Shown here in pieces: positions 6,809 through 62,916 of a DNA stretch of 64,000 nt. Where the stretch lies: positions 1 to 64,000 of IMG/VR virus record IMGVR_UViG_3300028840_008185; one strand, written 5' to 3'. The notes beneath the pieces are model-generated. The model was given only the letters and a program-made list of their open reading frames with translations, was not told the DNA's origin and made no database searches. Both the position numbers and the translations under genes were made by a program. The stretch's first letter is position 1. Every line of letters starts with the position of its first letter.

Positions 6809-7391
6809 CTTCCTTCTCCTTTTCTAAATAAACTCGCAGGCTCTAAGTATTATGATTCCAAACATTCCAACAAGAACTAGCATCCAAATTGCAACAAAGG
6901 TCCAACCAATTGCCCTTGAAAAACGCGGAAACTTTTCATAGATGTGCTGGCAGCCGCGAATAATGCCAAACACAACAAGAGCGAGAGCTATTATAAAGCC
7001 CATCATCATTAGGAACTCTCTGGATTCTTCCGGACTAATCATTCTTCAGCCTTTCTAATACTCTATCAATGACCTTCTGTGCTCTTTTACTTGGCCTCTT
7101 TGTCAAGAAACCTCTTCTCCTGCCCTTGTCGTAAGGAACCGGAGTGGAAAACTGCACTGCGGTTAAGTCCACAACCTTGCCGTTATCTTCTATCCACCAG
7201 TGAGAAGCGCCCTCGTGCTTTAAATTGACCGCATATAATCCGGCGGCTTTGCCGCCTTTCAGGTGATAGTAAGCCTCGCTGGCCACATAACAATGACCTG
7301 CGAGAGGATGAGTTCCACGGAACTGCGGCTTCAGCAGATCTGGCGTTAGAGACTTTACGATAAGCTTCTTGATGTTCATATTTTCCTTTCG

Positions 7392-7471: not shown

Positions 7472-7478
7472 GGTGTTA

Positions 7479-7947
7479 TTGAGAAGATCGATAGGCGGGA
7501 TTCTGTCTAGGGCCATCATTCATCTAGGCCAGCCATTACTGACTAGCTCAAGCCCCCTACCCAATCCTTAATCTGCGAGCAACAGACGGATCTGTTTGGA
7601 GTTGCACCACCTAGAGATTGGCCGTTTCAACCAGACTTAACTGGCTCGTCTCTGTTCCTCTAATCCGGCCCTCACGGGCGATGGGCGTTGCCCACTAAGC
7701 TGCTCTGTGGTGTCCCGACCTTCCTCGTCAAGATTGCTCGTCTCCATAAATTAGTTTGCGTAGAATCTCATATGCCACCTTAGCACACTTTTCTTGGTAA
7801 AGTTCTTTTGCTTTGCAATAAACCTTACCCTCATTTTCAAAGGTTCCCAGAAGCCTATGAAGTTCAACATACGCCCTAATAAGCTCATCCTTCTCTTCGT
7901 AAGTCATGGAGACTCGCTTTCTTGCCGCGATGGCCTAATCTTCTCAA
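7479..7947 (-). ncRNA. rnpB: RNase P RNA, minimal bacterial type, with an ORF-containing P3 insertion
   Basis: CR-I GAGGAAGGTCGGGAC, CR-II ACAGAGA, CR-III TGAAAC, CR-IV AGATGAAT, CR-V ACAGAATCCCGCCTA; P1 TTGAGAAGAT/ATCTTCTCAA; P2 GGCCATC/GATGGCC. Confidence 0.93.
7728..7907 (-). CDS. 59-aa ORF nested in RNase P RNA helix P3 (MTYEEKDELIRAYVELHRLLGTFENEGKVYCKAKELYQEKCAKVAYEILRKLIYGDEQS)
   Basis: uninterrupted ATG..TGA frame filling the P3 insertion; composition like neighbouring phage ORFs; just under the ORF-track cutoff. Confidence 0.7.
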   Translation of the reverse strand: MTYEEKDELIRAYVELHRLLGTFENEGKVYCKAKELYQEKCAKVAYEILRKLIYGDEQS

Positions 7948-24419: not shown

Positions 24420-24428
24420 GTCTTTCTC

Positions 24429-26288: not shown

Positions 26289-27587
26289 TTACGATGCTTT
26301 CATGTTGTGTAGTGGCTTCAAAACATTCAATATTTCCGCCGTTTCTGATAAGTTGCTGATGATTTCGTCGCTGTCTTTGTATGCGCCTGGCGCCTCATCC
26401 AATGTGCTTTCACCTACGGAGGTGGAAAATATGCTACTCATCTCATCTTGAAAATCATCCAGCGACAACTTCTTCTTTGCTTGGCTTCTACTCATCTTAC
26501 GGCCTGCTCCATGTGGAGCCGAATAGTTCCAATCCTCATTTCCCTTGCCCACACAAAGCAAAGAGCCTTCTTTCATATTCAACGGAACAATAAACTCTTC
26601 ATCCTCGTGGGCACTAACAGCTCCCTTCCTTATTATCATGTCGTTAAAGTTAATATAGTTGTGTATAGTCTCTAATGTTTTAGACGCTTTCTTAATCCCA
26701 AGGGCTTTCATAACAGCATGGGCAATTGCTTTCCTATTGGCCGCAGCATATCCTTGAGCTAAAATCATACTAAACAAATATCCATACTTATCATCGCCCT
26801 CAAGCCATTCCAAGCCACTTGCTTTTATCTTAACATCAACGCCCAACCTTTCCTTGGCTTTCCTAATCTCTTTCTGCCATTCTTCATTAGGAAGACTTTG
26901 TTTGATGTTATTAATAGCTTCTTTTAAGTCTTCTGTCCTAAGCTTCTTTAATCTTTTCTCTGCTCTCTTTTGCCAGTAATTACATATCTTTAGTCCAAAG
27001 TTTCTTGACCCCGTATGAATAATGAAATAGCTAAGTCCAGATTTTGATTCACAAAACTCAATGAAGTGGTTGCCGCCGCCCAGGGTTCCTAGGCTGCGCT
27101 CTACATATCCTCTGTCGGCATTGACTTGCTTGCACACCTCGCCAAGAAATCTACTATCCATGGTTGGGACATCGCAATTAAACTTGGCCCCAACCTGTCG
27201 AGCCTTATGTCTTAGGTCTTCCCAGTCAATCCAATCGTCAGTTTTGTATTCTTTTGATTCATGTATATCGAAACCAAAAGGCACGGATTGTCTAACCTTG
27301 TGGTCAAGCAACTCGTGATCTATCTCATCAAAAGCATCACCGACTTCACACACAAGCATTCCACAACCAATATCTACGCCAACCACATTTGGAATTACTT
27401 TGTCTCCCAGAGGCATTGTGAAGCCAATAACAGAGCCCTTACCTGCATGAGTGTCTGGCATAATAGCTACTGGATTTGTGAACGCTGGATGGTTGATCAT
27501 GCGTGTGATTTGTGCTACGCATTGTTCTTCAGCGTTGTCTGTGAAAACCGTAGCATCACTATATTTGCCGTAAATTATGAAGCTCAT
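26289..27587 (-). CDS. rtcB: RtcB family RNA ligase
   Basis: MPDTH.G.G..IG, VGVDIGCG, GTLGGGNHFIE, HTGSR, HNY, RKGA, SAPHGAGR, DEAP.AYK. Confidence 0.96.
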   Translation of the reverse strand: MSFIIYGKYSDATVFTDNAEEQCVAQITRMINHPAFTNPVAIMPDTHAGKGSVIGFTMPLGDKVIPNVVGVDIGCGMLVCEVGDAFDEIDHELLDHKVRQSVPFGFDIHESKEYKTDDWIDWEDLRHKARQVGAKFNCDVPTMDSRFLGEVCKQVNADRGYVERSLGTLGGGNHFIEFCESKSGLSYFIIHTGSRNFGLKICNYWQKRAEKRLKKLRTEDLKEAINNIKQSLPNEEWQKEIRKAKERLGVDVKIKASGLEWLEGDDKYGYLFSMILAQGYAAANRKAIAHAVMKALGIKKASKTLETIHNYINFNDMIIRKGAVSAHEDEEFIVPLNMKEGSLLCVGKGNEDWNYSAPHGAGRKMSRSQAKKKLSLDDFQDEMSSIFSTSVGESTLDEAPGAYKDSDEIISNLSETAEILNVLKPLHNMKAS

Positions 27588-27606: not shown

Positions 27607-27679
27607 TACCCCCGGAGGGCAACGATCCCCCAACCTCCTGGTTAAAAGCCAGTTGCTCTGCCAATTGAGCTACGGAGGC
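27607..27679 (-). tRNA. tRNA-Lys (TTT) copy 1
   Basis: loop CTTTTAA; divergent T loop ATCGTTG. Confidence 0.85.
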
Positions 27680-27686
27680 AAGTAAG

Positions 27687-27761
27687 TGCCCCCGGTAGGA
27701 GTCGAACCCACAACTCACGGGGTAAAAGCCCGGTGTGATTAAACCATTTCACCACGGAGGC
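27687..27761 (-). tRNA. tRNA-Lys (TTT) copy 2
   Basis: CGGG-CTTTTAC-CCCG. Confidence 0.88.
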
Positions 27762-29086: not shown

Positions 29087-30817
29087 TTAATAGTTTTCCC
29101 TGATATATTCCAGGGTTGGAAGCACTCTCTCACCCTTTACTTCCTCAACACCCTCAAACATGAGAATCTGCTGGAAAATCTTCTCAGAGAATCCAGCTAC
29201 AACATTGGAACGAGGGTCGCCAGATGGCGCCTGCTGCGTTCCATAGCCCTTAAGGTCGAAGAAGTGAGCGTAGGCCTGAGGGTTGACCTCCCTGCGATAC
29301 TTCGCAAGGAATTCAGCGACACTTCTGTTTCCGCCCGTGTCGTAGCACTGCATATCGGACAGGACCACGATTCTGTCTACGTGGATCTTCTGTTCGAACA
29401 GGTGCTTGAAGACTTCATAGGCGTTTGTTGCCTGACCTCTATAGTTGGCCTTGTAGTTCGCAATCTCGTTCATGTTGGTCACAACCGAGTTGCGCTTGCT
29501 TAGAACTGGCCAAACAGCCTTGTTTCCAAAAGCGGTGACGTAAGATTCGTCAGAACGCTGATGGACCATGGCGGCAAGGATGTTTGCAGTATCCAGCAAC
29601 GTCACACAAGAGCCCTTGGACAATGGGTATTTCATGCTTCCAGAGTTGTCAGAAGCAATGCAAGTTATTCCCGAAAGCTCTGGGATGTTCTCTACCGAAT
29701 GATCAAGAGCAGTCTCAACCGCCTCAACAAGCAGCTGAACAGATCTCTGATCCCAGGAACTTCTGTTACGGTTGGAAGAAGCACTTCCATATCCGCGAAT
29801 CGAAGAGAACCAAGCATTACCAGGGTTCAGGGTTCTGTATAGAGCCATGAACCTAAATGGAAGCTGCTTAGACTTTCTAACAGCCTTAGCGTCTCCGATT
29901 CTCTCCGCAACCATCCTGATGACAGCCAGAGGCATGCCGGCTTCCAAGAAGTTGGCAACGTTACGAATCAGAGCCATATAAGGCATCAGTGGAACAACTG
30001 CTCCCCATACCTCTGGCTTGCTTCCAAACTGGGACACAAGAACTTCCCAAGTAACTGCGGCTTTCTTGGCCAAAGCTGGAATATCCTCAGTCCATAGATT
30101 ACGGGACGTAAGCTCCTTACGAGCCGCGATTACAGGAGTGGCCTTTGGGTTAAGAACCTCTCCAGTAAAGATATAATGGCGTAGCTCTGGAGACAGAGGG
30201 TACCCTTTTCTCCTCTCGCAGAAGCGTAGGAGATCCTTAAAGGATGGGTGTCCCTTTCTGTTATACTTCAAGATTTCATACTCGGACATCTTGGACATTC
30301 TATCAGCAACTCCCTTCTTCAAGGAAGCTGGGAACGCTTTCCAACCGAATAGGTGCTCATAAGCCGCGACAAGCTGAAGCACGTCATCTGCCCTTCTGGA
30401 GATACGAGGCACGTATCTACGGACGAATGGCTTGGTTCCAGCGGAATTTGCAGCCACGGCAAGCATAACCTGAGGCGTAGTTCTCATGTTCATCTCAACA
30501 CGAGCCCAATGCGCCAGAGCAAGCAGATCCTTTGGATTTGGTCCTCTGGCGATCTCTCTACACGCCTCGATAATCTTGACGGCTTGCTCGTCAAGATCCT
30601 CAACGTTATAGTCACCGTCCCTTAGTTTCTTTGGGTCAAGAGTATCTGGGTGATACTTTGGCTCCACGAACAGGGCGGATCCAATTGTAGCCAGCAAGTA
30701 TTCTGCTGGGCTCTCGAAATCAAACGCAAGTCCGCCTGGCCTGTTGGCCGTAGCAGCCTTGTGCTCCCTTAGTGCGTCTTCAAAAGTTCTCTTGTTCTTC
30801 ATTCCTAGCTTCGTCAT
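29087..30817 (-). CDS. rsr: Ro60/Rsr TROVE-domain RNA-binding protein with C-terminal vWA
   Basis: N..GG.AF, AR...NMRT, RADD, LKKG, TWE..S, MPYMALIRN, SKQLPFRF, vWA MIDAS DNSGSM, LSDMQ, GFSEKIF. Confidence 0.95.
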   Translation of the reverse strand: MTKLGMKNKRTFEDALREHKAATANRPGGLAFDFESPAEYLLATIGSALFVEPKYHPDTLDPKKLRDGDYNVEDLDEQAVKIIEACREIARGPNPKDLLALAHWARVEMNMRTTPQVMLAVAANSAGTKPFVRRYVPRISRRADDVLQLVAAYEHLFGWKAFPASLKKGVADRMSKMSEYEILKYNRKGHPSFKDLLRFCERRKGYPLSPELRHYIFTGEVLNPKATPVIAARKELTSRNLWTEDIPALAKKAAVTWEVLVSQFGSKPEVWGAVVPLMPYMALIRNVANFLEAGMPLAVIRMVAERIGDAKAVRKSKQLPFRFMALYRTLNPGNAWFSSIRGYGSASSNRNRSSWDQRSVQLLVEAVETALDHSVENIPELSGITCIASDNSGSMKYPLSKGSCVTLLDTANILAAMVHQRSDESYVTAFGNKAVWPVLSKRNSVVTNMNEIANYKANYRGQATNAYEVFKHLFEQKIHVDRIVVLSDMQCYDTGGNRSVAEFLAKYRREVNPQAYAHFFDLKGYGTQQAPSGDPRSNVVAGFSEKIFQQILMFEGVEEVKGERVLPTLEYIRENY

Positions 30818-31919: not shown

Positions 31920-31993
31920 GGAACGCAGGAAAGAGTGTCGAGAGCTGGTCTCCTGTGCAAATGAAGTATCCCTCGGCTGGACCTTGCGGTTCC
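31920..31993 (-). ncRNA. Y-like RNA 1 (short, no tRNA cargo)
   Basis: GCAAGGTCCAG..GGATACTTC..TTTCCTGC scaffold with terminal stem; about 1.1 kb from rsr. Confidence 0.75.
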
Positions 31994-32720
31994 TATTTTA
32001 TATTTTGAAGTATTGTCTGCCCCAAAATGTCTTTAAATATGTTTCCATACCTACTCCACCAGTTCCAATACATCCTAAATATTGAGAATGTGGCATAGAA
32101 AATGTCTGCTTGTGCGGACTTAACACCGAACTTAAATGGGCGTCTATCAACTATCTCAGGCATCCCAATCCCATCCTATCGTCAACTTGGCCAATTGCAT
32201 CTCTAACAGATAGGCTCCTGTGCCAAATGAGCCACCTCGGACAAGTTTCAATGGCCCAAGTTTCCCTCTCAAATCCACATTTGGCTGCCATCTGAGCGCT
32301 ATGTAGGCCATAACTTCGTGGCGAGTAGTATATCTTGAGCCCTTGATGATGGTTATTTCAGGCATATGAAACCTTTTCTCACTTGTTCCTCAAGCCACCA
32401 CTGCCCGGTAGACTTCCAATCGGACCAGAAAAAACGTAGTTGGTCAAAATCGACTCTAGAATAATGCCAGGGCACCGCGTAGGCATTGCAAAAACGCCCA
32501 TGTCGTCTTCGACGGTTTATTGGGACAACCTCAAGCGTAGAAATCATCCCCAAGAATCCCATTTTCAAGATACAATCTTACATAATAAGTTAGACTCACG
32601 CTTAATATCCAATCAATAACTCTGAGTGAATCAAGCCCAATTTTTCTGCCATAATAGCTTTCGGGGAAAAAGTCTAATATTCTTGCCTGCCTTTTCTCTA
32701 TAACCATCTTTCACCTTTCG

Positions 32721-33611: not shown

Positions 33612-33685
33612 CGGAACCGACGAGAGTCGCACTCGCTTTCTCCGCCGTGACAGGGCGGTACCTCCACTACTTCGGCCTCGGCTCC
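33612..33685 (-). tRNA. tRNA-Asp (GTC) copy 1
   Basis: CCGCC-CTGTCAC-GGCGG; G73. Confidence 0.85.
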
Positions 33686-34611: not shown

Positions 34612-34724
34612 AAGCCAGGAATAAACGCGCTGGGGTTAACTACTGGAATTGAACCAGCTTAGTTTCGTTATCAGCGAAATGCATTACCATAATGCGAAGT
34701 ATCCCAATCGCTGGACCTTGGCTT
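34612..34724 (-). ncRNA. Y-like RNA 2 carrying an unpermuted tRNA-Ile(GAT)-like D/anticodon/T body
   Basis: scaffold + GCAT-TATGGTA-ATGC, TTTCG-CTGATAA-CGAAA, GCTGG-TTCAATT-CCAGT. Confidence 0.8.
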
Positions 34725-34787
34725 GTTTCGTGGAACTAAAAAGTTTTGCATCGACAGCAAAATCTATCAATATCTTGATATTATTAG

Positions 34788-37175: not shown

Positions 37176-37905
37176 ATAATATTTCTTCATACTCAAAAGC
37201 CCATCTTAAAACATAAATACCGGCAGCAAACCAGCTTCCACTTATGCTCTTATTAAACTTATCTCTAAAGCCGGCATAATGCACAAAAGTATTGAAACTA
37301 ATTGTGAGCCCTGGACTACGAAGTTCTATCATAACTTAATCTCTACATAATTGGGGATTGGCCTTGACCACAAATAAAACAACAACTCACGCCAAAGGAT
37401 ACTATTAATGATGTGCCGAGATTCATTTGTGAGAGACTGTAAAATCTCGCTTACATTCCCTATGAAACATTCGCCCGGAAAAATGGCCGTTGGGTGTCTT
37501 AACTCTATCATCATATCTTATCGAGCAGATCTAATGTCTTTCTAATCGGCTCCCTTTTGTGTATGCCTTTGGAGTATGAGCATTCCAGTCTTTTCCAGAA
37601 TCTCTGAAGCTCTAGCTTGAGTTCCCAGGGCAGATGTATGTAGGCTCTGTCTATGAACAAGTTGCCACTACGCGATACGCCCACATCGATGTCGCCATCT
37701 TCAAAGTAGAAAGTGGACTCGTAATATCTACGCTTCCACTTATCAACGGGGATCCCCTGTATCCTGGCCACCAATCTTTCTGCTGAAGTATCGGGGCATT
37801 TTAACTCTTCTCGTTGGCTATGAGCGCAGCCAATCAAGAAGCTCATTAGCATGGCAAACACTAATAAAACTTTCATTCCTTACCTTCTCTTTCTCTCCAA
37901 AAATA

Positions 37906-38029
37906 AACCAGGAAAAGTGATAAGGGCAAAACCCTTCCCCCTTAATTTGGGGGAGCCAGGAGTCGAACCTGAGCTGACATGATCTGTTTTACGGACAGTA
38001 TGAAGTATCCCTATATCTGGACCTTGGTT
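37906..38029 (-). ncRNA. Y-like RNA 3 with permuted cargo (anticodon arm GTA, T arm, loop-closed acceptor)
   Basis: scaffold + CTGT-CCGTAAA-ACAG, CAGG-TTCGACT-CCTG, TCCCCC-AAATTAA-GGGGGA. Confidence 0.8.
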
Positions 38030-38031
38030 CG

Positions 38032-38103
38032 TGGAACCCCCCGGACTTGAACCGGGACTGAGAGATTTTCAGTCTCCTGTGCTACCAATTACACCAGGGC
38101 TCC
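38032..38103 (-). tRNA. tRNA-Phe (GAA)
   Basis: GAGA-CTGAAAA-TCTC. Confidence 0.92.
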
Positions 38104-40144: not shown

Positions 40145-40843
40145 CTGTTTATATCTTTCCCATATCTGCGTGTATAGTTTGCCAGCCTCTTGAGCGAACG
40201 AGTATGTTCGTTTGATATAAGAAATGCAGACGAACGCCAATAATGCCTATCACTTGCAGATCGGTTTTGGTATGGATTACATTTTTGCGCGTCAGCTGCG
40301 GCTTTCTATCTGTTATTTCCATTCATGACTCTCCACATCATGCGCAACTCTAGTTCTAATCCAATCGGCCATTACCCATCTATGACCGTTTATCCTTCGC
40401 ATTGCAGGCTGGATGGCCATAATTATTTCCCATGTTATTATCGTCGTGTTCTTACTCTTCCATATCAGCTCAATTTCCATAGGTCTTCCTTAAGTCTTAT
40501 TTTCCACGGACCAAAAAGAGGCCACATATTAACGTGGTGCATTTCTATTGTATTTATTCTACACATTACAGTCAGCACAGCCGAAAAAATAAAACCCAAA
40601 TCGGTTGGTTTTGGCCTTACTTCATCCTTTCTGCGATTTACAAGTTCCATGAATCTTCTCTGTCCGGATTGTGTTTGTAGTATGGAAAATATTCCCTGAG
40701 GGCACGCGGCATAGATCCACCAAAACCAATTTCTATAGTAGTCAGTAATCTCCAGTATCCATCTTTAACGGCATACCCATACATGGCATAATCAGCTTCA
40801 TCTTTGATTATGTTCTTAATTTCCATATCTTCCTCAAAAAACT

Positions 40844-41027
40844 GGCCAGGAAAAGGGCGCAAAGAGAAGCTGTCCCTCATTCGGGACGCACTCCCCAAAG
40901 GTGGGAACCAGACAACCAGGTGGGATGGGGTCATCTGGCCCCCAGCGAGCCACTGATGGGCTCGCAAGGTTTATCGTGGGGAACGCAGGAGTCAAACCTG
41001 AAGTATCTCTTTACTTGGACCTTGGCT
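40844..41027 (-). ncRNA. Y-like RNA 4 (T arm, acceptor stem with ~80-nt insert, D arm)
   Basis: scaffold + CAGG-TTTGACT-CCTG, CGTTCCCCA/TGGGGAGTG, GTCCC-GAATGA-GGGAC. Confidence 0.8.
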
Positions 41028-41213
41028 CAATTTTCTTAATTCTTTTACTTATTTGTCTTACAAAAACCATACACGAGAGTCTCTCATTAAGGGTATCCCA
41101 GACACTATCGAAAGCTTTAAAGTGGATAAAGTCGTCAACACCTCTATATGAGCGTATTACCTTGATACTCTTCATTATTATTCTTCCACCAAAAATATCG
41201 ACATTTGCGGGAC

Positions 41214-41581: not shown

Positions 41582-41601
41582 TTAATTCTCCTTTCTGGGT
41601 T

Positions 41602-41677
41602 GGATAAGCAGGGAAGATTGCAAGAAGAGTTTCCTGTTGGTTGGTAGAAGTATCTTCTTACTGGACCTTGCTTACCC
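41602..41677 (-). ncRNA. Y-like RNA 5 (short, no tRNA cargo)
   Basis: AGCAAGGTCCAG..AGATACTTC..TTCCCTGCT scaffold. Confidence 0.75.
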
Positions 41678-41679
41678 GG

Positions 41680-41751
41680 CAGGGGCGACAGGATTCGAAC
41701 CCGCGCCTTACGGTTTTGGAGACCGCTGTGCTCCCGTTACACCACGCCCCT
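41680..41751 (-). tRNA. tRNA-Trp (CCA)
   Basis: CGGT-CTCCAAA-ACCG; G73. Confidence 0.93.
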
Positions 41752-44617: not shown

Positions 44618-45574
44618 TTAAACTATACGAGTATAACCACAACTCGGACATACAAATCTAGAACATGCTGCTTGATTTGCTATGTATGATGGGCTGTCCA
44701 TATCTGGAATTACATGATAATGACTTGGATGCTTCCAGAAGAAATGCTCAACATAACAGAAAGAACAATCACACTCATAACAATCCGTTGCAGCAGTCAT
44801 CTTAATAACAAAACCATCAAATCTGTCTATCTCTCTAAACTTTATTTTGCTATAATTCCTTTTCTCGGCATACTCAATACAAGCCCGAGTTTTGCTATTT
44901 ACATTGGGAACTTTAAACCAGCACTCTCCTTCATCGCTCCAGCAGTCGGGGCTAAACCAATCACAATCGCCGCAGATTTTCGTGAATATATTTCCCAGAT
45001 AGTCTTGCATCTGCCTTGCTGCATTTCCTCTATGACTTACTGAGTTCTTCTGCTCCTCACTCATCTCCGCAAAAGTCATACCAACTGGAGCATAATAGAA
45101 TATGCTATCGTATTGAACTTGTGGCTTCGGCTCTCCTCTTGCCTCTTTTAGCAACTCACCATTACAAACTCCGGTGAAGCAAATAGGGTTTTCTAGAAAA
45201 TCGGGATCGGCTAAGACCATGCAGGTTACAAACTGAGCTTCTCTATGCTCAATCCCCTCCATCTTCTTGAGAATGAAGTTTCTTTTCTCTTCGTCTGTGA
45301 CGTCTTCTCCTGCGCATCTTGCTGATATTACGCCGGGGTAACCGCTGAGAGCGCGAATGCTCATGCCACTATCGTCAGCTATGGCTGGAAGACCAGTATG
45401 TTCAGCAGCGTAGCGAGCCTTGAGCACAGCATTTTCTTCAAATGTCTCGCCAATTTCTTCCACATCTTCAAGATCGAAATTGGAGATCGGAATGAACTCT
45501 ACGCCATCTACTTCCAGAAGCTCCTGTAATTCTTGAAGCTTGCCGGGATTTCTAGTCGCTAGAACTATCTTCAT
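44618..45574 (-). CDS. rdgB: RdgB/HAM1 non-canonical purine NTP pyrophosphatase with Cys-rich C-terminal extension
   Basis: ATRNPGKL.E, TFEENA..KA, ADDSG, PGV.SAR, TFAEM...KN.VSHRG. Confidence 0.92.
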   Translation of the reverse strand: MKIVLATRNPGKLQELQELLEVDGVEFIPISNFDLEDVEEIGETFEENAVLKARYAAEHTGLPAIADDSGMSIRALSGYPGVISARCAGEDVTDEEKRNFILKKMEGIEHREAQFVTCMVLADPDFLENPICFTGVCNGELLKEARGEPKPQVQYDSIFYYAPVGMTFAEMSEEQKNSVSHRGNAARQMQDYLGNIFTKICGDCDWFSPDCWSDEGECWFKVPNVNSKTRACIEYAEKRNYSKIKFREIDRFDGFVIKMTAATDCYECDCSFCYVEHFFWKHPSHYHVIPDMDSPSYIANQAACSRFVCPSCGYTRIV

Positions 45575-45892
45575 TTTCAAGCCTCTCCAGTTCTTCTTCA
45601 AGTTCGGGGATCCGCTCTGCCTGTTTGACGGCATAAGCCAGCTGCTCTCTTACGCAACAAAGCTCGCACCAATTAGATGACCAGCCGTGCGACCAGGCTA
45701 GTGCTCCACCTTCTCCAACCCATTCCATTGTAGCATTTCTTTCGCCACAGTTCTCGCACACTATCTCTTCGATCTTTTTATGGTTGGGACAATATTCATC
45801 GGAACATATATATCCCTCTCCTTTGGGGCTAATAACCATTAAAGCTCTGCATTCTTCACAGAAGATAGACATTCTTTCTCCTTTCTTTTTAG

Positions 45893-47066: not shown

Positions 47067-47873
47067 TTATATCTCCAAGGTTCCTGAGTCCAAGGGCACG
47101 ATATTCCATTCCATCTCTTTATCGAAATCGGCCTTATAATATTTGCACTCACAACAATAAGCTCCATCCCAGGTTATATCACATCTGTCTTGCAGCGGAT
47201 TATCAAAACTGGGAATATGAGCGCTCTTCCTGTGCCCACATTTGGGACATTTCGTAGTATCACGCATCTCGTATTCTATCATTACGCCATCCCTGGTTTC
47301 CAGTTGGGTTCTCTGTTTTCCAGAAAAGCCTTCGCGTGCTCTTCGCTTATGAAATCCTTAATCTTACCGTCGGGCCAAGTGAGACGAGCCATATACAACC
47401 TGTAGATCTTCTCGTCTTTTACAATAAACCTAGATGTCTCTACTCTCTTCATTTCTGGCTTCATTGTTTTAATCCTTTATGATTACAATCGTTCGTTTGC
47501 CTTTTCTTGGCTTACCTTTGACCGGCTTGGCTCCTGTGGGATTGATGTAGTATCCACCTCGATTACCTTCATCTACCCACTCACCCTTATCGCAACCACA
47601 CACAAGAACAGGGCCATCTCCACAGCGCCCATCGTAATAGGCTGCTTCACCGCAAACGCTACAAACCCATTCAGACATCAGTTCTCTTCTCCTTCTTTGA
47701 AGACCTGTGCCTTCTCATCTATGGTCTTTCTCACCGCTTTCTTCATAGCCTCAAGAGCTTGCTCATAAGTCATACGGCCAGTCTTCATAGCTTCTCGTAG
47801 CTCTTTGGCCAACTCTCCAAGTTCGGGAGAGTAAACGAAAGTAACATCACTCATCTTACCTGCTTTCTAAAAA

Positions 47874-48028
47874 GGAACCGTATCGGGAATGTGCGCAAAG
47901 AGTCCTGTTGTGATTTTCACCACACGCCCGTAAGAGTGGGCGTGCCTGGATTCGAACCAGGAGTCTATTGAATTAGAGTCAATTGTGTTTTCCGAAGTAT
48001 CTCCCTACTATGACCTCGATCTGGTTCC
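47874..48028 (-). ncRNA. Y-like RNA 6 carrying a complete D-loop-permuted tRNA with CTA (amber) anticodon
   Basis: scaffold + GGAAAACAC-A-ATTGA-CTCTAAT-TCAAT-AGACT-CCTGG-TTCGAAT-CCAGG-CACGCCC-A, linker CTCTTAC, GGGCGTG-TG-GTGAAAATC. Confidence 0.85.
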
Positions 48029-48930
48029 AACTCTATGTTAAGCATTCACTTAAGGCTGCTAGTAAGACCAACAATACAACCAATCCTAAACCAGCCATTA
48101 CTGCATATTTAACAAAATTACGAAATGAAATACCACTTCCATATTCTAATTCTATGAACTTATCAGCCGCTTTCTCCATTTCGTCGGCTTCAAAAGTTTC
48201 TATGGGCATAGGACAAAGCTCAAATCTGGTTCCATCATTATACACATCTATCTGGTGGTTCTTACAAACAGACCAACTAGATGGCTCCTGATTCTTAAGT
48301 TCAAGTAAATCAGTTTCCTTGTCCCACAAGTAAGCACATTGAACTGTATATTTACTACCATAGACGATGTGTTTCTCTTTAAGTTGGGCTATAATCTTAT
48401 CTCTATCCATCAATTCCACCCAAACATTACTGTAGCTATTAGCAGATACATCAAATAACCAACAACAGCGCCGCCAAGTATGTACGGCGAAAGTTCAGCG
48501 AGTTTCTTAAGTCTGTCCATTATCTTCCTCGTATTTTGCCTTGAGTCGCTCAAGTTGGGCTCTTTCTCTTGCCTCTTGTTCCGCGAGTCTTTTCCGCTCT
48601 TTCTCTTCTTCTTTCTTTGCTGCGGCCTCGTTTCTTAGCCTTATGGCCTCTTCCTCTTTGACCACCCAATCATCGTCCCACAAATAAGAGAGCGGAAAAC
48701 TGACATGCTCGTAATCTGTATTACATCGAAAAGAAAAGTAAAAGGTGGCGTCTATTTGGTCATCTTCAATTTCAACTTCATCGGGATGCCACTCATCAGT
48801 AATAATACCACGAGCTATAGCTACCTCTGTAGCGATCCTTTCTGCTTCAACCATCACCTTCTTGTATTTAAGCACTGCTTCTACAACTGCTTCTCTATCC
48901 ATTTCTTCCATGTTCCCACCTTTCTGAAAA

Positions 48931-49063
48931 TTATCCAGGAATAAACGGCCAGGGAGAAAAATTCGCCCACCATAAAGCGGTGGGCCCTGGATTTGAACCA
49001 GGTCATTGAAGATTGGAAGTTTCAATTCATCCGAAGTATCCCTAATACCTTGACCTTGGATAA
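48931..49063 (-). ncRNA. Y-like RNA 7 carrying D-loop-permuted tRNA-like cargo (TCC-like loop)
   Basis: scaffold + bulged arm around CTTCCAA, CCTGG-TTCAAAT-CCAGG, GCCCACC-GCTTTAT-GGTGGGC. Confidence 0.8.
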
Positions 49064-49064
49064 G

Positions 49065-49148
49065 TGGAGCCGGGTGGAATCGAACCACCAATGCCCGAAG
49101 GCCACAGGGTTACAGCCTGCTAAGCACACCACACTGCTCAACGACTCC
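49065..49148 (-). tRNA. tRNA-Tyr (GTA)
   Basis: GCAGG-CTGTAAC-CCTGT; type II. Confidence 0.9.
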
Positions 49149-49168: not shown

Positions 49169-49403
49169 AAGCCAGGAAAAATCGACAGAGTTTAATCATC
49201 CGTGTCCTACCACTGGACTACCGCTCGGTAATGGCGTCGGGGTTATGAACCCCTGAATACACCGTGCGTGGTAAGCCGTGTCATTACCCTTTGGACTCGC
49301 ACGGGATTCCCAGACATCTGGTTGCCTTGTCGAGCGGCCAGGAATCGAACCTGGGCTACGGGCTCCGCATGCCAGAAGTATCTCTCGTCTGTAACCGTGG
49401 CTT
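49169..49403 (-). ncRNA. Y-like RNA 8 (anticodon-loop-permuted tRNA, ~110-nt structured insert in the acceptor loop)
   Basis: scaffold + CCAGG-TTCGATT-CCTGG-CCGCTCG-A ... CGAGCGG-TA-GTCC-AGTGGTA-GGAC. Confidence 0.8.
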
Positions 49404-49406
49404 TCG

Positions 49407-49480
49407 AGCGGGCAACGGAATCGAACCGTCGTGATTGGGGACATGAGCCCCAATTGGGAGCGCCTCCATCGCAAGCCCGA
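49407..49480 (-). tRNA. degenerate tRNA-Met (CAT)-like
   Basis: TGGGG-CTCATGT-CCCCA with a good T arm, but only 5 acceptor pairs and an odd D region. Confidence 0.5.
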
Positions 49481-50579: not shown

Positions 50580-51884
50580 TCATACCTGCTCCCATACATC
50601 CATGATGTCTATAATTTGTTCTCTCGCTGGGCCAACGCCTATGAAAGCGATTGGTATTCCAAGCTCGAAACCTATAAAATCAATATACTTTTTTGCCTCT
50701 TCTGGCAAATCTTCGAACTTGCGGGCTCCAGAAATATCACACTTCCAGCCAGGAAGCGTTTTGTAAATTGGCTTCATTCCCGACAAATCAGTGGGTAGAA
50801 CATGTCTGTTTCTCTGTTTTCCATATCCAACACAGACTCTAATCTCATCGAAATCATCGAGCACATCCAGCTTGGTGATGGCCAGATGTGTGGTCCCATT
50901 AATTCTACAACTATGGAATAACGGCACCAAGTCCAGCCAACCACAATCTCTTGGCCTACCAGTTGTGGTTCCATACTCATGACCTCTACCTCTGATCATC
51001 TCTCCGCTGGCGTCAGTCAAAACGGTTGGAAAGGGCCCTGCACCAACGCGAGTGGTGTATGCTTTGAAGACACCAACAACATCTCTAATCTTCGTAGGGC
51101 CAACTCCAGAGCCCGTACAGGCTGCTCCAGCGACAGGGTTAGAAGAGGTCACGAAGGGATAGGTGCCGTGGTCTATGTCAAGCAGAGCACCTTGCGCTCC
51201 TTCAAATAGCACATTGCGATCATACAAATAATTGTTGATTAGAACAGAAGTATCATTGTCTATGTAGCTCTCAAAGAACTTGGTGAAGCTCTTAATCCAA
51301 GGGGCAAGCTCCTCTGCTCTTCTCATAAGGAAATTGTTCTCAAGGAGGTGAAGCTCAACTTTCTTCTTAAGCTCTTCGTAGGGAAGCAGCATGTCCATCA
51401 TCCTGATTCCACATCTCAGTGCCTTATCTTTATATGCTTGGCTTATCCCCTTGCCGGTTGTGCCTATCTTGTTTCCTTTCCTTCTGTTTTCAGACAACTG
51501 CTCCAACTCTCTGTGAGTGGGCAGGATCATATGTGCCTGGCCAGATATACGGAAGTTCTTAGGCAGCGGGAGGCCGCCTGGAATGGGCCTTCCTCGATTG
51601 TTTATATTCATGAAACTCAAAAGCTCTGCTCTCAAGCCCTCCGGATCAATCACCATCCCATTCCCCAGGACACAAATAAAGTCTCTGTTTCCAAGTGCAT
51701 ACTGAACAATTCCAGACGGAATGTGATGCAACTTGTAAGTCTTTTCACCCACTACGACCGTGTGGCCTGCGTTCGGGCCACCGGCAAAACGAACGACCAT
51801 ATTAGCATCTTTGGCCAAATAATCAATAACTTTTCCCTTGCCTTCATCTCCAAATTGTAATCCTACTACTACGGTTCCAGGCAC
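50580..51884 (-). CDS. purA: adenylosuccinate synthetase
   Basis: GLQFGDEGKGK, GGPNAGHT, IGTTGKGI, EGAQG, GTYPFVTSS, EYGTTTGRPR. Confidence 0.96.
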   Translation of the reverse strand: MPGTVVVGLQFGDEGKGKVIDYLAKDANMVVRFAGGPNAGHTVVVGEKTYKLHHIPSGIVQYALGNRDFICVLGNGMVIDPEGLRAELLSFMNINNRGRPIPGGLPLPKNFRISGQAHMILPTHRELEQLSENRRKGNKIGTTGKGISQAYKDKALRCGIRMMDMLLPYEELKKKVELHLLENNFLMRRAEELAPWIKSFTKFFESYIDNDTSVLINNYLYDRNVLFEGAQGALLDIDHGTYPFVTSSNPVAGAACTGSGVGPTKIRDVVGVFKAYTTRVGAGPFPTVLTDASGEMIRGRGHEYGTTTGRPRDCGWLDLVPLFHSCRINGTTHLAITKLDVLDDFDEIRVCVGYGKQRNRHVLPTDLSGMKPIYKTLPGWKCDISGARKFEDLPEEAKKYIDFIGFELGIPIAFIGVGPAREQIIDIMDVWEQV

Positions 51885-57567: not shown

Positions 57568-59245
<1,678 letters not shown>

Positions 59246-61413: not shown

Positions 61414-62916
61414 TTACATATTCGCCTGAAACTCCACAATATATCTAAGCCTATGTTGCTGGCCTGGGCCAGAAGAGGCATAGGTCATATTTTCGGAGTT
61501 GTAAAGGCCACCATATCCTCGGTTGCTAGGAACAGCATAAACACTATGCGTGCCCCTCGGAGGCTCTCTAAAGAACTGAGAGCTGGTGACGATATGTGGC
61601 TTGCCTACAATCACATCTTCCAAAAACATAAAGACTCTATCGTTCTGGGTCTTTCCAGACCAGAAAGCTCCTCTACACCCACAATAATTCATGGACTTAG
61701 AACTACTCTCGGCGTGATAGAGCGCATCACCAAACATCGACCCAGTATGAACGGCGCCAGATGGCCTGATCAAGAGACCTCTTGAAATGATGCCCACCAT
61801 GTTCTGGGGACGCGTCCCGTGCCAAAGTGGCCACACATTAGCTTGCGTAAAGAGTTTCCGTTCGTCAGTTTGTAGATCAGGGCGTTGTAGTGTGGTGAAT
61901 CTTGGCTTCTCGCCCTTACCCTTAACCTGTCTCGCAACTCTAGTGAGCGTATCGTTGAAATGATCACTTTCCTTATTCCTCTCAAGACTAAAGATATTGT
62001 AGAGCTTTATCTTTCCTAAGAACTGGTGGTTGGATGCGCGAGTCTCAAACAACAGCTTCGTAATCCACTGCCCAGTCGGGCTCTTGGGATCTATCCAGTC
62101 TAATTCCGCATTCAATTTCTTATACTGGTCATCAATAGCACTTCCCTTACCTAGCACAGATGCAACATTTTTGGCGTCCAAGAAGGTGTCCAAAGTGTCA
62201 TGTTTCTCCATGATCTTGTCTATGGTATCCAACCTTAGGGATGCCGGGTCAATCTTGTGTGGAAGCACATGAGGAATAAGGCTATAGAACTGACTGGTTA
62301 GTTGGTCATATTCGCTGGAACCAGACTTAGTTTTGGCATTAACTCTGGATTTACAATCATCCAGAACCGCTCGTCCCTTATCAATCTGCTCTTTCGTCAA
62401 TTGTCCAAGGGGACACTTCAGCGTCATTGTGATAAACTGGCCGGTTGTCCCAAACCAACCAGACACCATGCGGACCACTTCTGGGTGCAAAGATGAGCTG
62501 CCATCAGCTTGCTTGATCTTTCCCTTAACTTTAAGCCCCGTCATGGGCTTCTTGATTTCCTTGGCTCCCTGTGAGCCAACATCCGTAATAGCCAGATCCA
62601 CTTCTCTATAGGGATTTCTCTTTCTGTCCCTTTTCTTTCTAACTAGCGACTCATAGTCGCTTATACAGGCTGATTCGGATTGATAGTATCTGTGTTCCGT
62701 CGTGGGATTTTTGGCTCCAACTCTTCCATACATCGTCATGATTCTGGCCTTACCGTTTGCAGCAACCTGAATCTCAGCATGATAGAACTTGTTATTGTTC
62801 TTTGCAACGTCGGTGCAATTCCCTTCCCACCTTTTCGTGACCTTGAAAGTAGATGGAAAGTTGGGCTGCTTGGCATCGCCAGCCTTCCAAGCCTTCACCT
62901 TCATAGATGCGCCCAT
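61414..62916 (-). CDS. PARP-like ADP-ribosyltransferase (WGR-like + regulatory + catalytic domains)
   Basis: NNNKFY...YGRVG; PLGQL...LTSQFYSLIPH; LWHGT, GSMFG.ALY.A..SSKS.NY, E, RLRYIVEF. Confidence 0.9.
   Translation of the reverse strand: MGASMKVKAWKAGDAKQPNFPSTFKVTKRWEGNCTDVAKNNNKFYHAEIQVAANGKARIMTMYGRVGAKNPTTEHRYYQSESACISDYESLVRKKRDRKRNPYREVDLAITDVGSQGAKEIKKPMTGLKVKGKIKQADGSSSLHPEVVRMVSGWFGTTGQFITMTLKCPLGQLTKEQIDKGRAVLDDCKSRVNAKTKSGSSEYDQLTSQFYSLIPHVLPHKIDPASLRLDTIDKIMEKHDTLDTFLDAKNVASVLGKGSAIDDQYKKLNAELDWIDPKSPTGQWITKLLFETRASNHQFLGKIKLYNIFSLERNKESDHFNDTLTRVARQVKGKGEKPRFTTLQRPDLQTDERKLFTQANVWPLWHGTRPQNMVGIISRGLLIRPSGAVHTGSMFGDALYHAESSSKSMNYCGCRGAFWSGKTQNDRVFMFLEDVIVGKPHIVTSSQFFREPPRGTHSVYAVPSNRGYGGLYNSENMTYASSGPGQQHRLRYIVEFQANM

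What the first reader, a model, noticed from the sequence alone, without database searches (positions are those of the whole stretch)
47874..48028. Complete circularly permuted amber-suppressor tRNA hidden inside a Y-like RNA
Seen: the 3' part of a tRNA comes first (47993-47937: GGAAAACAC, anticodon arm AUUGA-CUCUAAU-UCAAU, perfect T arm, CACGCCC-A). A 7-nt linker follows, then the 5' part (47929-47912: GGGCGUG-UG-GUGAAAAUC). Joining at the shared UC gives a normal cloverleaf with D arm GUG-AAAAUCGGAAAA-CAC, a 7/7 Watson-Crick acceptor and anticodon CUA. Established: permuted tRNA genes occur in some algae and archaea and mature by ligation plus RNase P/Z cleavage; two-piece tmRNAs are a bacterial analogue. 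Inference: the phage RNase P could open the acceptor linker to give a chargeable two-piece tRNA with a Ro handle in its D loop, or RtcB could seal the D loop to release a mature UAG suppressor. Either route would give conditional stop-codon readthrough that standard tRNA finders miss.
Basis: partly seen in the sequence, partly recalled or inferred. Interest (0 to 1): 0.9.

Follow-up and report, generated by a model that had tools for sequence, protein, structure and literature searches.

The report
Phage Y RNA with rearranged tRNA shape
This is a small non-coding RNA of a giant phage. It folds like a complete tRNA whose parts are in a rearranged order and which carries a handle for the Ro60 protein, but its "anticodon" changes between related phages, so it is a tRNA look-alike and not a hidden stop-codon suppressor.

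Summary
They are more than chance. Four orthologues (75-85% identical) keep the proposed cloverleaf with nine compensatory base-pair changes. One of these lies in the long-range 3-bp D stem, and the competing local D hairpin is not conserved. The structural reading is therefore supported: a tRNA-shaped module with a closed 7-bp acceptor stem, a full anticodon-like arm, and the Y RNA stem inserted in the D loop.

It belongs to the known world of tRNA-mimicking bacterial and phage Y RNAs (YrlA class). It shares their GAUACUUC motif, T arm and closed acceptor hairpin, and it is one of at least eight Y-like paralogues in a phage of at least 452 kb that also encodes Ro60 (Rsr), RtcB and an RNase P RNA. 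The break in the D loop is a topology I did not find described.

The functional claim is not supported. The anticodon positions read CUA, UUA, GAU and UUA in the four orthologues. TAG ends 26 of 105 ORFs in the window. TAA is the commonest stop in the relatives that carry UUA. Two relatives lack the RNA altogether. RNase P opening of the acceptor loop is plausible by precedent (M. smegmatis YrlA), but decoding is unlikely.

The parts
47869..48028 (-). Whole Y-like RNA, from the first base of the terminal stem to the end of the U run
   Evidence: CM R2 match at 47867-48030, 183.5 bits. Orthologues align end to end.
48017..48028 (-). Terminal stem, 5' strand (GGAACC, AG, AUCG). Together with the following AGGUCAUAGU, this is the presumed Ro60/Rsr-binding module.
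   Evidence: Helix 1: 10 pairs, 3 with compensatory changes, 92.5% paired. UCGAGGUCAUAGU is invariant in the 4 orthologues.
47874..47885 (-). Terminal stem, 3' strand (CGAU, AC, GGUUCC), followed by U5 at 47869-47873
   Evidence: All window paralogues end the same way, with a U run.
48001..48008 (-). Second stem, 5' strand (GUAGGGAG)
   Evidence: Helix 2: 8 pairs, 100% paired, changes only G-U/A-U.
47895..47902 (-). Second stem, 3' strand (CUCUUUGC)
   Evidence: CUCUUU recurs in the 3' module of the window paralogues.
47994..48003 (-). GAGAUACUUC, the YrlA-family signature motif. It contains the conserved UA that kinks the stem in the Salmonella YrlA crystal structure.
   Evidence: Eight minus-strand copies in the window. 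Invariant GATACTTC in 27 canonical phage YrlA. UA kink: bioRxiv 10.1101/312249.
47985..47993 (-). D-loop 3' part GGAAAA (G18/G19-like GG) and D-stem 3' strand CAC
   Evidence: GG and AAA are conserved and the base after GG is variable. CAC becomes CUC in L206 together with GUG to GAG (pair 46/122).
47967..47983 (-). Anticodon-like arm: 5-bp stem AUUGA/UCAAU, 7-nt loop CUCUAAU, 'anticodon' CUA at 47974-47976
   Evidence: The stem is conserved. U33 and A37 are invariant. The triplet is CUA/UUA/GAU/UUA in the orthologues.
47962..47966 (-). Variable loop AGACU. Its last U is conserved and could pair with an A at position 15 (Levitt-type pair).
   Evidence: The pairing itself is an inference from tRNA numbering.
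47945..47961 (-). T arm CCUGG-UUCGAAU-CCAGG
   Evidence: Helix 5: 2 compensatory pairs, 100% paired.
47937..47944 (-). Acceptor 3' strand CACGCCC plus discriminator-like A
   Evidence: Helix 6: 7 pairs, 3 compensatory, 100% paired. The A is conserved in all four.
47930..47936 (-). Linker CUCUUAC that closes the acceptor stem. Its 3' end is the predicted RNase P site (before G 47929).
   Evidence: The loop (discriminator-like A plus linker) is 8, 17, 7 and 6 nt in T, O1, O5 and O2 and is not conserved in sequence. The cleavage site is an inference from M. smegmatis YrlA (PMC4201824).
47923..47929 (-). Acceptor 5' strand GGGCGUG
   Evidence: helix 6.
47903..47922 (-). U8-G9-like UG, D-stem 5' strand GUG (47918-47920), and an A-rich D-loop 5' part that leads back to the Y stem
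   Evidence: UG, GNG and AAAA are conserved in all orthologues. The local hairpin GUGA-AAA-UCAC (47920-47910) is favoured by ViennaRNA but is not conserved.
29087..30817 (-). rsr (Ro60 homologue: TROVE plus vWA domains), the presumed protein partner
   Evidence: Pfam TROVE 3.8e-34, vWA_Ro60 8.5e-09.
26289..27587 (-). rtcB RNA ligase gene (context)
   Evidence: Pfam RtcB 3.3e-66.
7476..7745 (-). Phage-encoded RNase P RNA, class A (context: candidate enzyme for opening the acceptor loop)
   Evidence: Rfam RF00010, 145.8 bits, E 7e-45.

Best explanation
The element is a roughly 155-nt phage Y RNA related to the YrlA class.

Structure (supported by covariation):
- Its 5' and 3' ends pair into a long bulged stem of the kind Ro60 proteins bind. 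The phage encodes a Ro60 homologue, Rsr.
- The rest folds into a complete tRNA-shaped module: a T arm, a closed 7-bp acceptor stem, a canonical anticodon-like arm, and a D stem made of two distant strands.
- The Y stem therefore emerges from the D loop near the elbow.

Function (inferred from what is known of Y RNAs):
- The stem holds Rsr while the tRNA-shaped module is presented to proteins or ribozymes that recognise tRNA shape, such as RNase P, the CCA-adding enzyme, modification enzymes or RNA repair enzymes. This would tether or gate Rsr within the phage's tRNA, RNA-repair and processing programme.
- The acceptor loop may be opened by RNase P, as in M. smegmatis YrlA.
- The anticodon triplet itself is not under conserved selection, so the RNA most likely is not a decoder.

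Likely origin (inferred): a tandem pair of tRNA genes or a dimeric tRNA transcript, with the 3' two-thirds of one copy, a spacer, and the 5' third of the next, fused to a Y RNA stem.
For: - Sequence and coordinates.
- Covariation on four orthologues (75-85% identity) supports every helix, including the long-range D stem: 97.4% paired, 9 compensatory pairs, 0/500 shuffles. The local D hairpin is not conserved.
- Nucleotides that make tRNA tertiary contacts are conserved: U8, the A run at 14-15, GG, A21-like A, U48, the T loop, and A73.
- Y RNA family features: the GAUACUUC motif is shared with 27 canonical phage YrlA. There are eight paralogues in the window with common 5' and 3' modules and U-run ends. 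The canonical-YrlA CM R1 hits the target's T arm plus acceptor hairpin at 22.3 bits, E 8e-5, and hits paralogue 49172-49410 full length at 38.4 bits.
- Rsr, RtcB and RNase P RNA lie in the same tRNA island.
- Precedent (PMC4201824): YrlA RNAs are tRNA mimics with a closed acceptor stem, and the 7-bp version is cut by RNase P and receives CCA.
- Dimeric-tRNA origin model: bioRxiv 10.1101/312249. The window's own tRNA-Lys tandem junction scores 50.6 bits with the YrlA model.
- Anticodon positions vary: CUA, UUA, GAU, UUA.
Against: - No expression, Rsr binding or processing data exist for this RNA.
- It lies 17 kb from rsr, not next to it.
- The Ro-binding consensus GNCGAAN0-1G is matched only approximately (AUCGAGG).
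- The D-stem covariation rests on one double substitution in a 3-bp stem.
- Nearest-neighbour thermodynamics prefer the local hairpin: -46.7 vs -43.4 kcal/mol, pair probability 0.7 vs 0.012.
- Three of the four orthologues carry nonsense anticodons (YUA). This is unusual: none of the 20 robust calls among other viral YrlA-like RNAs was a nonsense anticodon. The explanation leaves it unexplained.
- Two relatives lack the RNA, so whatever it does is dispensable in some genomes.
Confidence: 0.72

Rival explanations
1. After RNase P opens the acceptor loop, or RtcB seals the D loop, the RNA becomes a chargeable tRNA that reads UAG and gives conditional stop-codon read-through.
For: - In silico joining gives an ARAGORN tRNA(cta) with a 7-bp acceptor, A73, U33 and A37.
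- The tRNA fold is under selection.
- The 7-bp acceptor is kept in all orthologues.
- M. smegmatis YrlA is cleaved by RNase P and gets CCA, and its authors raised possible aminoacylation (PMC4201824).
- The phage has its own RNase P RNA and RtcB.
- Three of four orthologues have nonsense anticodons, CUA or UUA.
Against: - The ortholog in L216 has GAU in an otherwise identical arm, so the triplet is not conserved.
- TAG ends 26 of 105 ORFs in the window, including the ORF immediately upstream. The two same-frame TAG junctions separate unrelated proteins with their own starts.
- TAA is the commonest stop where the loop reads UUA.
- No 3' CCA is encoded.
- No bulge-helix-bulge or other cleavage signal flanks the D-loop junction. 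RtcB needs cyclic-phosphate and 5'-OH ends, and nothing visible here would produce them.
- A two-piece form would carry about 80 nt plus Ro60 at the elbow, which the ribosome and RNase P contact (established structural knowledge; the consequence is an inference).
- Two relatives lack the RNA.
Confidence: 0.04
2. An ordinary YrlA fold. The D arm is the local hairpin GUGA-AAA-UCAC after the acceptor hairpin, the AUUGA hairpin is the YrlA 'V' stem-loop, and the upstream GGAAAACAC is only a linker. Nothing is topologically new.
For: - ViennaRNA prefers the local hairpin.
- All 27 canonical phage YrlA have a local D arm after the acceptor hairpin.
- Joining at position 26 also yields an ARAGORN tRNA.
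- Many canonical YrlA have a V hairpin with a 7-nt anticodon-like loop.
Against: - The local hairpin is lost in L206 (GAG followed by no complement) and needs a wobble pair in L205 and L216. It is 66.7% paired with gaps.
- The long-range pairing is 100% paired and has a compensatory change.
- The local loop would have 3-5 nt and no GG to contact the T loop, whereas the upstream GG is conserved.
- CM R1 does not align a D arm in the target.
Confidence: 0.1
3. A decoy or sensor for enzymes that act on anticodon loops, for example host tRNA-cleaving defence nucleases. Rsr and RtcB would handle the damaged RNA, and the triplet would change as the target changes.
For: - The anticodon-loop shape is kept (U33, A37, 7 nt, 5-bp stem) while the triplet changes completely in one lineage.
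- Across viral YrlA-like RNAs, many hairpins at this position have loops of the form CU-NNN-AA with many different triplets.
- The RNA co-occurs with rtcB, rsr and about 35 tRNA genes.
- In Salmonella the rsr-yrlBA-rtcBA operon responds to damaged tRNAs (PMC7790460, abstract).
Against: - This is purely inferential.
- CUA and UUA match no normal cellular tRNA, which makes them poor decoys.
- No nuclease or immunity gene was identified next to the RNA.
Confidence: 0.1
4. A tRNA-like punctuation or terminator element. Its only role would be to direct RNase P/Z cleavage or termination between the upstream ORF (48033-48419) and the downstream ORF (47678-47854).
For: - It starts 5 nt after the upstream stop codon and ends in a stem plus U5, 14 nt before the next start codon.
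- Five of the paralogues directly follow tRNA genes.
Against: - Punctuation would not require a conserved anticodon-like arm, tertiary-contact nucleotides, the GAUACUUC motif or a long bulged terminal stem.
- The terminator scan found no canonical terminator here.
Confidence: 0.05

Closest known systems
YrlA-class bacterial and phage Y RNAs (S. Typhimurium, M. smegmatis; Chen et al. 2014, PMC4201824; Wang et al. 2018, bioRxiv 10.1101/312249)
   Same: - The ends pair into a Ro60-binding-type stem.
- The GAUAC(UUC) motif is conserved.
- The T arm is followed directly by a closed acceptor-like hairpin.
- The module mimics tRNA and keeps the tertiary-contact nucleotides.
- It is found in genomes that encode Ro60, often with RtcB.
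- The 7-bp acceptor matches the M. smegmatis RNA that RNase P cleaves.
   Different: - There is no local D stem-loop. The D stem is formed between strands about 65 nt apart, so the Ro module emerges from the D loop and not from the 'anticodon stem'.
- A complete 5-bp/7-nt anticodon-like arm is present. The Salmonella structure is described as lacking an anticodon loop.
- The RNA lies 17 kb from rsr.
- The canonical YrlA covariance model aligns only the T arm plus acceptor hairpin.
Deinococcus radiodurans Yrn1
   Same: A Y RNA with partial tRNA mimicry that includes a possible anticodon-like arm (PMC4201824).
   Different: Yrn1 keeps the natural D-anticodon-T order, with the Ro stem in the acceptor position. 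In the window this matches paralogue 34615-34734, not the target. The Yrn1 loop has 6 nt.
Circularly permuted tRNA genes of Cyanidioschyzon merolae and some archaea (from my own knowledge, not checked in the library)
   Same: The 3' portion of the cloverleaf is encoded upstream of the 5' portion, and the acceptor ends are joined by a short linker that RNase P and tRNase Z would remove.
   Different: - Those genes yield real tRNAs through a circular intermediate. A bulge-helix-bulge motif is cut by the splicing endonuclease and the ends are ligated.
- Here the other junction is a conserved 80-nt Y RNA stem with no such motif, the organisms lack that endonuclease, and the anticodon is not conserved.
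Two-piece (permuted) tmRNA of alphaproteobacteria and cyanobacteria (from my own knowledge)
   Same: A permuted gene order gives a tRNA-like domain assembled from two strands after processing.
   Different: tmRNA has a free CCA end, is charged with alanine through G3-U70, has no anticodon arm, and works with SmpB. None of these features is present here.
Junction of tandem tRNA genes (dimeric tRNA transcripts)
   Same: The order is the same: T arm, acceptor 3' strand, spacer, acceptor 5' strand, D region. The window's tRNA-Lys/tRNA-Lys junction scores 50.6 bits with the YrlA model. This fits the proposed dimeric-tRNA origin of YrlA.
   Different: The target lacks the 5' acceptor strand of the first copy and everything after the D region of the second copy. 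These are replaced by the Y RNA stem, and the whole unit is conserved as one structure.

Membership tests
YrlA-class Y RNA | Encoded in a genome with, and usually next to, a Ro60 (rsr) gene | tested here: inconclusive
   rsr is present at 29087-30817, but 17 kb from the target. Another paralogue (31925-32000) lies about 1.1 kb from rsr.
YrlA-class Y RNA | 5' and 3' ends pair into a long stem that carries the Ro-binding motif GNCGAAN0-1G on the 5' strand | tested here: inconclusive
   The stem is present and covaries (helix 1: 3 compensatory pairs). The motif is only approximate (AUCGAGG), although UCGAGGUCAUAGU is invariant in the four orthologues.
YrlA-class Y RNA | Conserved GAUAC motif (UA kink) 5' of the variable region | tested here: met
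   GAGAUACUUC at 48003-47994. It is invariant in the orthologues and in 27 canonical phage YrlA.
YrlA-class Y RNA | tRNA-like T arm followed directly by a closed acceptor-like stem-loop | tested here: met
   R1 positions 57-93, 22.3 bits, E 8e-5; 5 compensatory pairs in the two helices.
YrlA-class Y RNA | Local D stem-loop with a conserved GG-containing loop 3' of the acceptor hairpin | tested here: not met
   R1 aligns no D arm. The local hairpin has a 3-5 nt loop without GG and is not conserved. A long-range D stem replaces it.
YrlA-class Y RNA | Bound by Ro60/Rsr in vivo | not testable with these tools
   Needs immunoprecipitation of tagged Rsr.
Functional (suppressor) tRNA | Cloverleaf with a 7-bp acceptor, D, anticodon and T arms, and conserved tertiary nucleotides | tested here: met
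   Met only after in silico permutation: ARAGORN calls tRNA(cta). Covariation and conserved U8, GG, U48 and T loop.
Functional (suppressor) tRNA | Free 5' end at G1 and a 3' CCA end | not testable with these tools
   The acceptor is closed by a 6-17 nt loop (A plus linker) and no CCA is encoded. Free ends would need RNase P, trimming and CCA addition, as shown for M. smegmatis YrlA.
Functional (suppressor) tRNA | Anticodon conserved among orthologues | tested here: not met
   CUA, UUA, GAU, UUA in window, L205, L216, L206.
Functional (suppressor) tRNA | The genome shows dependence on, or tolerance of, read-through: the cognate stop is depleted, or genes carry in-frame stops | tested here: not met
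   Stops in the window: TAA 56, TAG 26, TGA 23 of 105 ORFs, with no TAG-split genes. TAA is the commonest stop in relatives with UUA. Only 64 kb of at least 452 kb was examined.
Permuted tRNA gene (algal/archaeal type) | 3' part of the tRNA encoded upstream of the 5' part, with a short linker across the acceptor ends | tested here: met
Permuted tRNA gene (algal/archaeal type) | Bulge-helix-bulge motif at the other junction, for endonuclease cleavage and ligation into a circle | tested here: not met
   By inspection of the covariation-supported structure. The junction is a long conserved stem system with a single 4-nt AUAC bulge. There is no 3-4-3 bulge-helix-bulge.

The most novel reading that the evidence does not exclude
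After RNase P opens the acceptor loop and CCA is added (as shown for M. smegmatis YrlA), the RNA is a two-piece, chargeable tRNA that carries Ro60 on its elbow and acts at stop codons. Three of the four known orthologues carry nonsense anticodons (CUA, UUA, UUA), which none of the other viral YrlA-like RNAs examined do. On this reading the phage would couple Ro60 or RNA repair to translation termination, or would conditionally read through stops.
Probability: 0.05. Interest if true: 0.9.

Novelty: new variant of a known kind. Interest (0 to 1): 0.55.

Why it matters
Y RNAs that mimic tRNA are known, but what their tRNA-shaped part binds is still an open question.

- This phage lineage offers a version in which the whole cloverleaf is kept, including an anticodon-like arm, and the Ro60 handle is moved into the D loop. 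That shows which parts of the tRNA shape are under selection: the elbow contacts, a 7-bp acceptor, and a U-turn loop, but not the triplet.
- The host genome is an unusually rich system. It has at least eight Y RNA paralogues with different tRNA-like modules, its own Ro60, RtcB and RNase P RNA, and about 35 tRNAs.
- This makes it a good place to test how Ro60-Y RNA particles connect to tRNA processing and repair during infection, and to test the dimeric-tRNA origin model of Y RNAs.
- It is also a warning that a perfect-looking suppressor cloverleaf can be a structural mimic.

Tried and rejected
**Database searches for the RNA and its relatives**
- Rfam, at gathering and E-value thresholds, gave only a sub-threshold tRNA hit. 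Rfam also fails to recognise canonical YrlA, so the absence of a hit is uninformative.
- Megablast against GenBank phages found nothing. A distant search found only a 60-nt match to the YrlA of Streptomyces phage Faust.
- Neighbouring proteins PurA and Ham1 and the 128-aa ORF, used as queries in IMG/VR, found only the source contig.
- The metagenome pattern scan found only the same phage on a 452.6-kb contig.
- Scans with the family's 5' motif found nothing new in viral contigs or GTDB genomes.
- A profile search with the upstream ORF family added no members.
- Rsr homologues in GenBank phages are all below 31% identity, so there is no known close relative.

**Origin and alternative roles**
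- I compared the tRNA-like part with the 36 window tRNAs to find a donor. None is clearly closest. The best match is a 9-nt identity to the D region of tRNA-Ala(UGC).
- attP-type tRNA fragment: rejected, because the 3' part covaries with the downstream 5' part and no integrase context was seen.
- Decayed tRNA pseudogene: rejected, because of the compensatory changes.
- Recoded (TAG-reassigned) genome: no sign in the window. The remaining roughly 390 kb could not be read.
- Promoter and terminator scan: one weak promoter-like site inside the upstream ORF and no canonical terminator.

**A revised view and a technical error**
- My own early favourite, the local D hairpin as in canonical YrlA, was overturned by the orthologues.
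- One CM search call failed because it had too many sources. As a result, loci L003-L110 were not searched with model R2.
Full report
**1. The observation**

- Terminal stem: GGAACC (48028-48023) pairs with GGUUCC (47879-47874) and is followed by U5.
- In order between the two strands:
  - GGAAAA-CAC (47993-47985) and A (47984)
  - a 5-bp/7-nt hairpin AUUGA-CUCUAAU-UCAAU (47983-47967)
  - AGACU
  - a perfect T arm (47961-47945)
  - CACGCCC-A (47944-47937)
  - a 7-nt linker
  - GGGCGUG-UG-GUG-AAAAUC (47929-47912).

ARAGORN finds 35 tRNAs in the window but nothing here. The Rfam tRNA model aligns 48005-47937 at 24.8 bits, below its threshold of 29. When the two pieces are joined in silico, ARAGORN calls a 7-bp-acceptor tRNA with anticodon CUA.

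**2. Surroundings**

- The window is the first 64 kb of IMG/VR contig 3300028840_008185 (318 kb). The same phage occurs on a 452.6-kb contig and in several other samples with an identical RNA.
- Almost every long ORF (22 of the 23 of at least 200 aa) and all tRNAs lie on the minus strand.
- The region is a tRNA and RNA-metabolism island: 35 tRNAs, a class A RNase P RNA (7476-7745, 145.8 bits), a Ro60 homologue Rsr (29087-30817) and RtcB (26289-27587).
- No close relative exists in GenBank phages. Rsr homologues there are all below 31% identical.

**3. A family of Y-like RNAs**

The motif G(A/G)GAUACUUC occurs eight times on the minus strand. Each copy sits in an RNA with three shared features:
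- a 5' module (A)CCAAGGUCCAG-N4-5-GRGAUACUUC, which in the target reads ACCAGAUCGAGGUCAUAGUAGGGAGAUACUUC
- a 3' module CUCUUU...UUCCUGG that pairs with the 5' module
- a U run at the end.

Their middle parts differ.
- Two are short (31925-32000 and 41607-41684).
- One has D, anticodon-like (GAU) and T arms in the natural order, without an acceptor (34615-34734).
- One is a canonical YrlA with a 102-nt insert in the acceptor loop (49172-49410).
- Three have an anticodon-like hairpin, a T arm and a closed hairpin: 37897-38033, 48924-49065 and the target.

Five of the eight directly follow a tRNA gene.

**4. Relation to known Y RNAs**

I scanned viral contigs with GATACTTC, a gap, and a T loop. 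This returned over 100 loci. About 60 of them have the YrlA layout described by Chen et al. 2014 (PMC4201824): the motif, a variable region, a T arm, a closed acceptor-like hairpin, and then a local D arm of the form UAGCUCAGUUGGUAGAGC.

A covariance model built from 27 of these (R1) gave the following in the window:
- the tandem tRNA-Lys junction: 50.6 bits (the dimeric-tRNA false positive that Chen et al. warned of)
- paralogue 49172-49410, full length: 38.4 bits
- the target, T arm plus acceptor hairpin only: 22.3 bits, E 8e-5.

The published work also establishes three relevant points.
- YrlA is a close structural tRNA mimic with a closed acceptor stem (bioRxiv 10.1101/312249).
- M. smegmatis YrlA, which has a 7-bp acceptor stem, is cleaved by RNase P in vitro, and is cleaved and receives CCA in vivo.
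- A dimeric-tRNA origin has been proposed for YrlA.

'Permuted tRNA inside a Y RNA' is therefore the known architecture of this class.

I also found that the hairpin before the T arm in many viral YrlA-like RNAs has a 7-nt loop of the form CU-NNN-AA. Of 55 such RNAs, 42 become ARAGORN-detectable tRNAs when un-permuted at position 26. Twenty give a robust call (at least 20 of the 56 joins tried), and these carry many different sense anticodons: Pro, Thr, Lys, Gly, Asn, Ala, Gln, Arg, Ile, Cys, Glu.

**5. Orthologues and the fold**

Homologues of the flanking small ORFs (69-83% amino-acid identity) led to syntenic contigs. The same intergenic position holds orthologues of the RNA:
- L205:3299-3467
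- L216:1795-1958
- L206:5376-5535
- a truncated copy in L214.

Two relatives (L212, L220) have no RNA there. The four full sequences are 75-85% identical.

- 97.4% of cells paired (shuffles 90.4 +/- 1.5)
- 9 pairs with compensatory changes (shuffles 3.1 +/- 1.4)
- 0 of 500 shuffles reaching either value
- slid controls at 32-52% paired.

By helix:

| Helix | Compensatory pairs | Note |
|---|---|---|
| Acceptor stem | 3 | 7 bp in all four; loop (A plus linker) 6, 7, 8 or 17 nt, unconserved |
| T stem | 2 | |
| Terminal stem | 3 | |
| Long-range D stem (47985-47987 with 47918-47920) | 1 | GUG/CAC in three, GAG/CUC in L206 |

I initially preferred the rival local hairpin GUGA-AAA-UCAC, and ViennaRNA favours it (-46.7 vs -43.4 kcal/mol). 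It is paired in only 66.7% of cells and is lost in L206.

The conserved unpaired bases match tRNA tertiary positions: U8-G9, the A run after the D-stem 5' strand, GG then a variable base then AAA before the D-stem 3' strand, A26, U33, A37, the last U of the variable loop, the T loop, and the discriminator-like A. UUC of the family motif can pair with G(G/A)A before the second stem. The Y module would then be a helix inserted into the variable part of the D loop.

It differs from canonical YrlA, where the D arm is local and the Ro module continues from the anticodon-stem position.

**6. The anticodon and the suppressor idea**

The 7-nt loops are:

| Sequence | Loop | Triplet |
|---|---|---|
| Target | CUCUAAU | CUA |
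| L205 | GUUUAAA | UUA |
| L216 | GUGAUAA | GAU |
| L206 | AUUUAAA | UUA |

- U33 and A37 are invariant. The triplet is not: L216 differs from L205 at all three anticodon positions while the rest of the arm is identical.
- In the window, 105 minus-strand ORFs end in TAA 56, TAG 26 and TGA 23 times. The ORF that ends 5 nt before the RNA uses TAG. Most extensions past TAG are short (23 of 26 are 43 aa or less).
- The two extensions that run into a following ORF in the same frame join unrelated proteins, each with its own start. One pairs a Cys-rich secreted protein with a thioesterase-like protein. The other pairs a 72-aa ORF with a complete GP88 domain.
- In the relatives, TAA is the commonest stop even where the loop reads UUA.
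- No CCA is encoded. No bulge-helix-bulge or other signal suggests excision of the Y module, and RtcB needs ends that nothing here is seen to make.

One observation remains odd and unexplained. Three of four orthologues carry nonsense anticodons. These are not independent events, however, and a single C/U change links CUA and UUA. I put the suppressor reading at about 4-5%.

**7. Most likely mechanism**

- Shown: a conserved, structured RNA with a Y RNA-type terminal stem, the YrlA signature motif, and a complete tRNA-shaped module in a new permuted topology.
- Inferred from the family: the stem binds the phage Rsr. The tRNA-shaped module recruits or occupies a tRNA-recognising partner, which ties Rsr to tRNA processing or repair during infection.
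- Plausible by precedent: RNase P, host or phage-encoded, cuts before G 47929, followed by trimming and CCA addition.
- Likely origin: a tandem tRNA junction fused to a Y stem.
- Dispensability in two relatives fits an accessory role.

**8. Limits**

- There are only four orthologues, and one double substitution supports the D stem.
- There are no expression or binding data, and the host is unknown.
- Only 64 kb of the genome was read for stop-codon usage.
- Loci L003-L110 were not searched with model R2, because one call failed.

**9. Verdict**

This is a new topological variant of a known kind (a YrlA-class, tRNA-mimicking Y RNA). It is of moderate to good interest, mainly as part of an unusually rich phage Ro60/Y RNA system.

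Noticed in passing
window minus strand: 31925-32000, 34615-34734, 37897-38033, 40832-41037, 41592-41684, 47869-48028, 48924-49065, 49172-49410: There are at least eight paralogous Y-like RNAs in one phage. They share 5' and 3' modules and have different tRNA-like inserts. Five start right after a tRNA gene, which suggests release by tRNA processing.
   Followed up: partly
window 7476-7745 (-): The phage encodes a class A RNase P RNA (145.8 bits). At about 270 nt it is shorter than the 367-position model, and several helices are deleted.
   Followed up: no
window 49172-49410 (-): This is a canonical YrlA (full-length match to the CM built from 27 phage YrlA, 38.4 bits). It carries a 102-nt insertion in the loop that closes the acceptor stem.
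   Followed up: partly
window 34615-34734 (-): This Y-like RNA has a tRNA part in the natural order: a D arm, an anticodon-like arm with GAU, and a T arm. The Y stem stands in place of the acceptor stem, as proposed for Deinococcus Yrn1. Rfam calls 34639-34700 a partial tRNA (41.4 bits).
   Followed up: partly
viral loci L090-L203 (e.g. L100:2291-2430, L137, L176:147-285): In many viral YrlA-like RNAs the 'V' hairpin is a 5-bp/7-nt anticodon-arm look-alike with loops of the form CU-NNN-AA. When un-permuted at position 26, 42 of 55 are called tRNAs by ARAGORN, with many different sense anticodons.
   Followed up: partly
window 27645-27714 (-): The junction of the two tandem tRNA-Lys(UUU) genes is the best hit of the YrlA covariance model (50.6 bits). 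This illustrates the proposed dimeric-tRNA origin of YrlA.
   Followed up: yes
L212:900-1020 and L220:560-640: Two related phage contigs keep the flanking genes but lack the RNA entirely, so the element has been lost or replaced in some lineages.
   Followed up: partly
window 33612-33685 (-): Rfam calls a tRNA here (44 bits) that ARAGORN does not report. It lies directly downstream of tRNA-Asp.
   Followed up: no
window 61414-62916 (-), 57568-59181 (-), 50580-51884 (-), 44618-45634 (-): The phage has unusual cargo: a PARP-like protein (WGR, PARP regulatory and catalytic domains), a Cpn60 chaperonin, adenylosuccinate synthetase, and a long Ham1-family protein.
   Followed up: no
window 24419-24431 and 6808-6826 (-): Two ORF pairs are separated only by a TAG in the same frame (25016-24429 / 24419-23904 and 7042-6824 / 6808-6137). 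The partners look unrelated and the downstream ORFs have their own starts, so this is probably coincidence.
   Followed up: partly
L068:10683-10705 region (IMGVR_UViG_3300037067_020703, 244 kb): A second large phage contig carries a minimal Y-like RNA with the same GGUCCAG...GGGAUACUUC module, followed by a tRNA. It may be a distant relative of this phage group.
   Followed up: no
window 47993-47983 vs 47920-47908 (-): GGAAAACACAA and GUGAAAAUCACAA form an imperfect direct repeat. This fits two copies of the same tRNA D region, but the sequence is A-rich and I did not test its significance.
   Followed up: no
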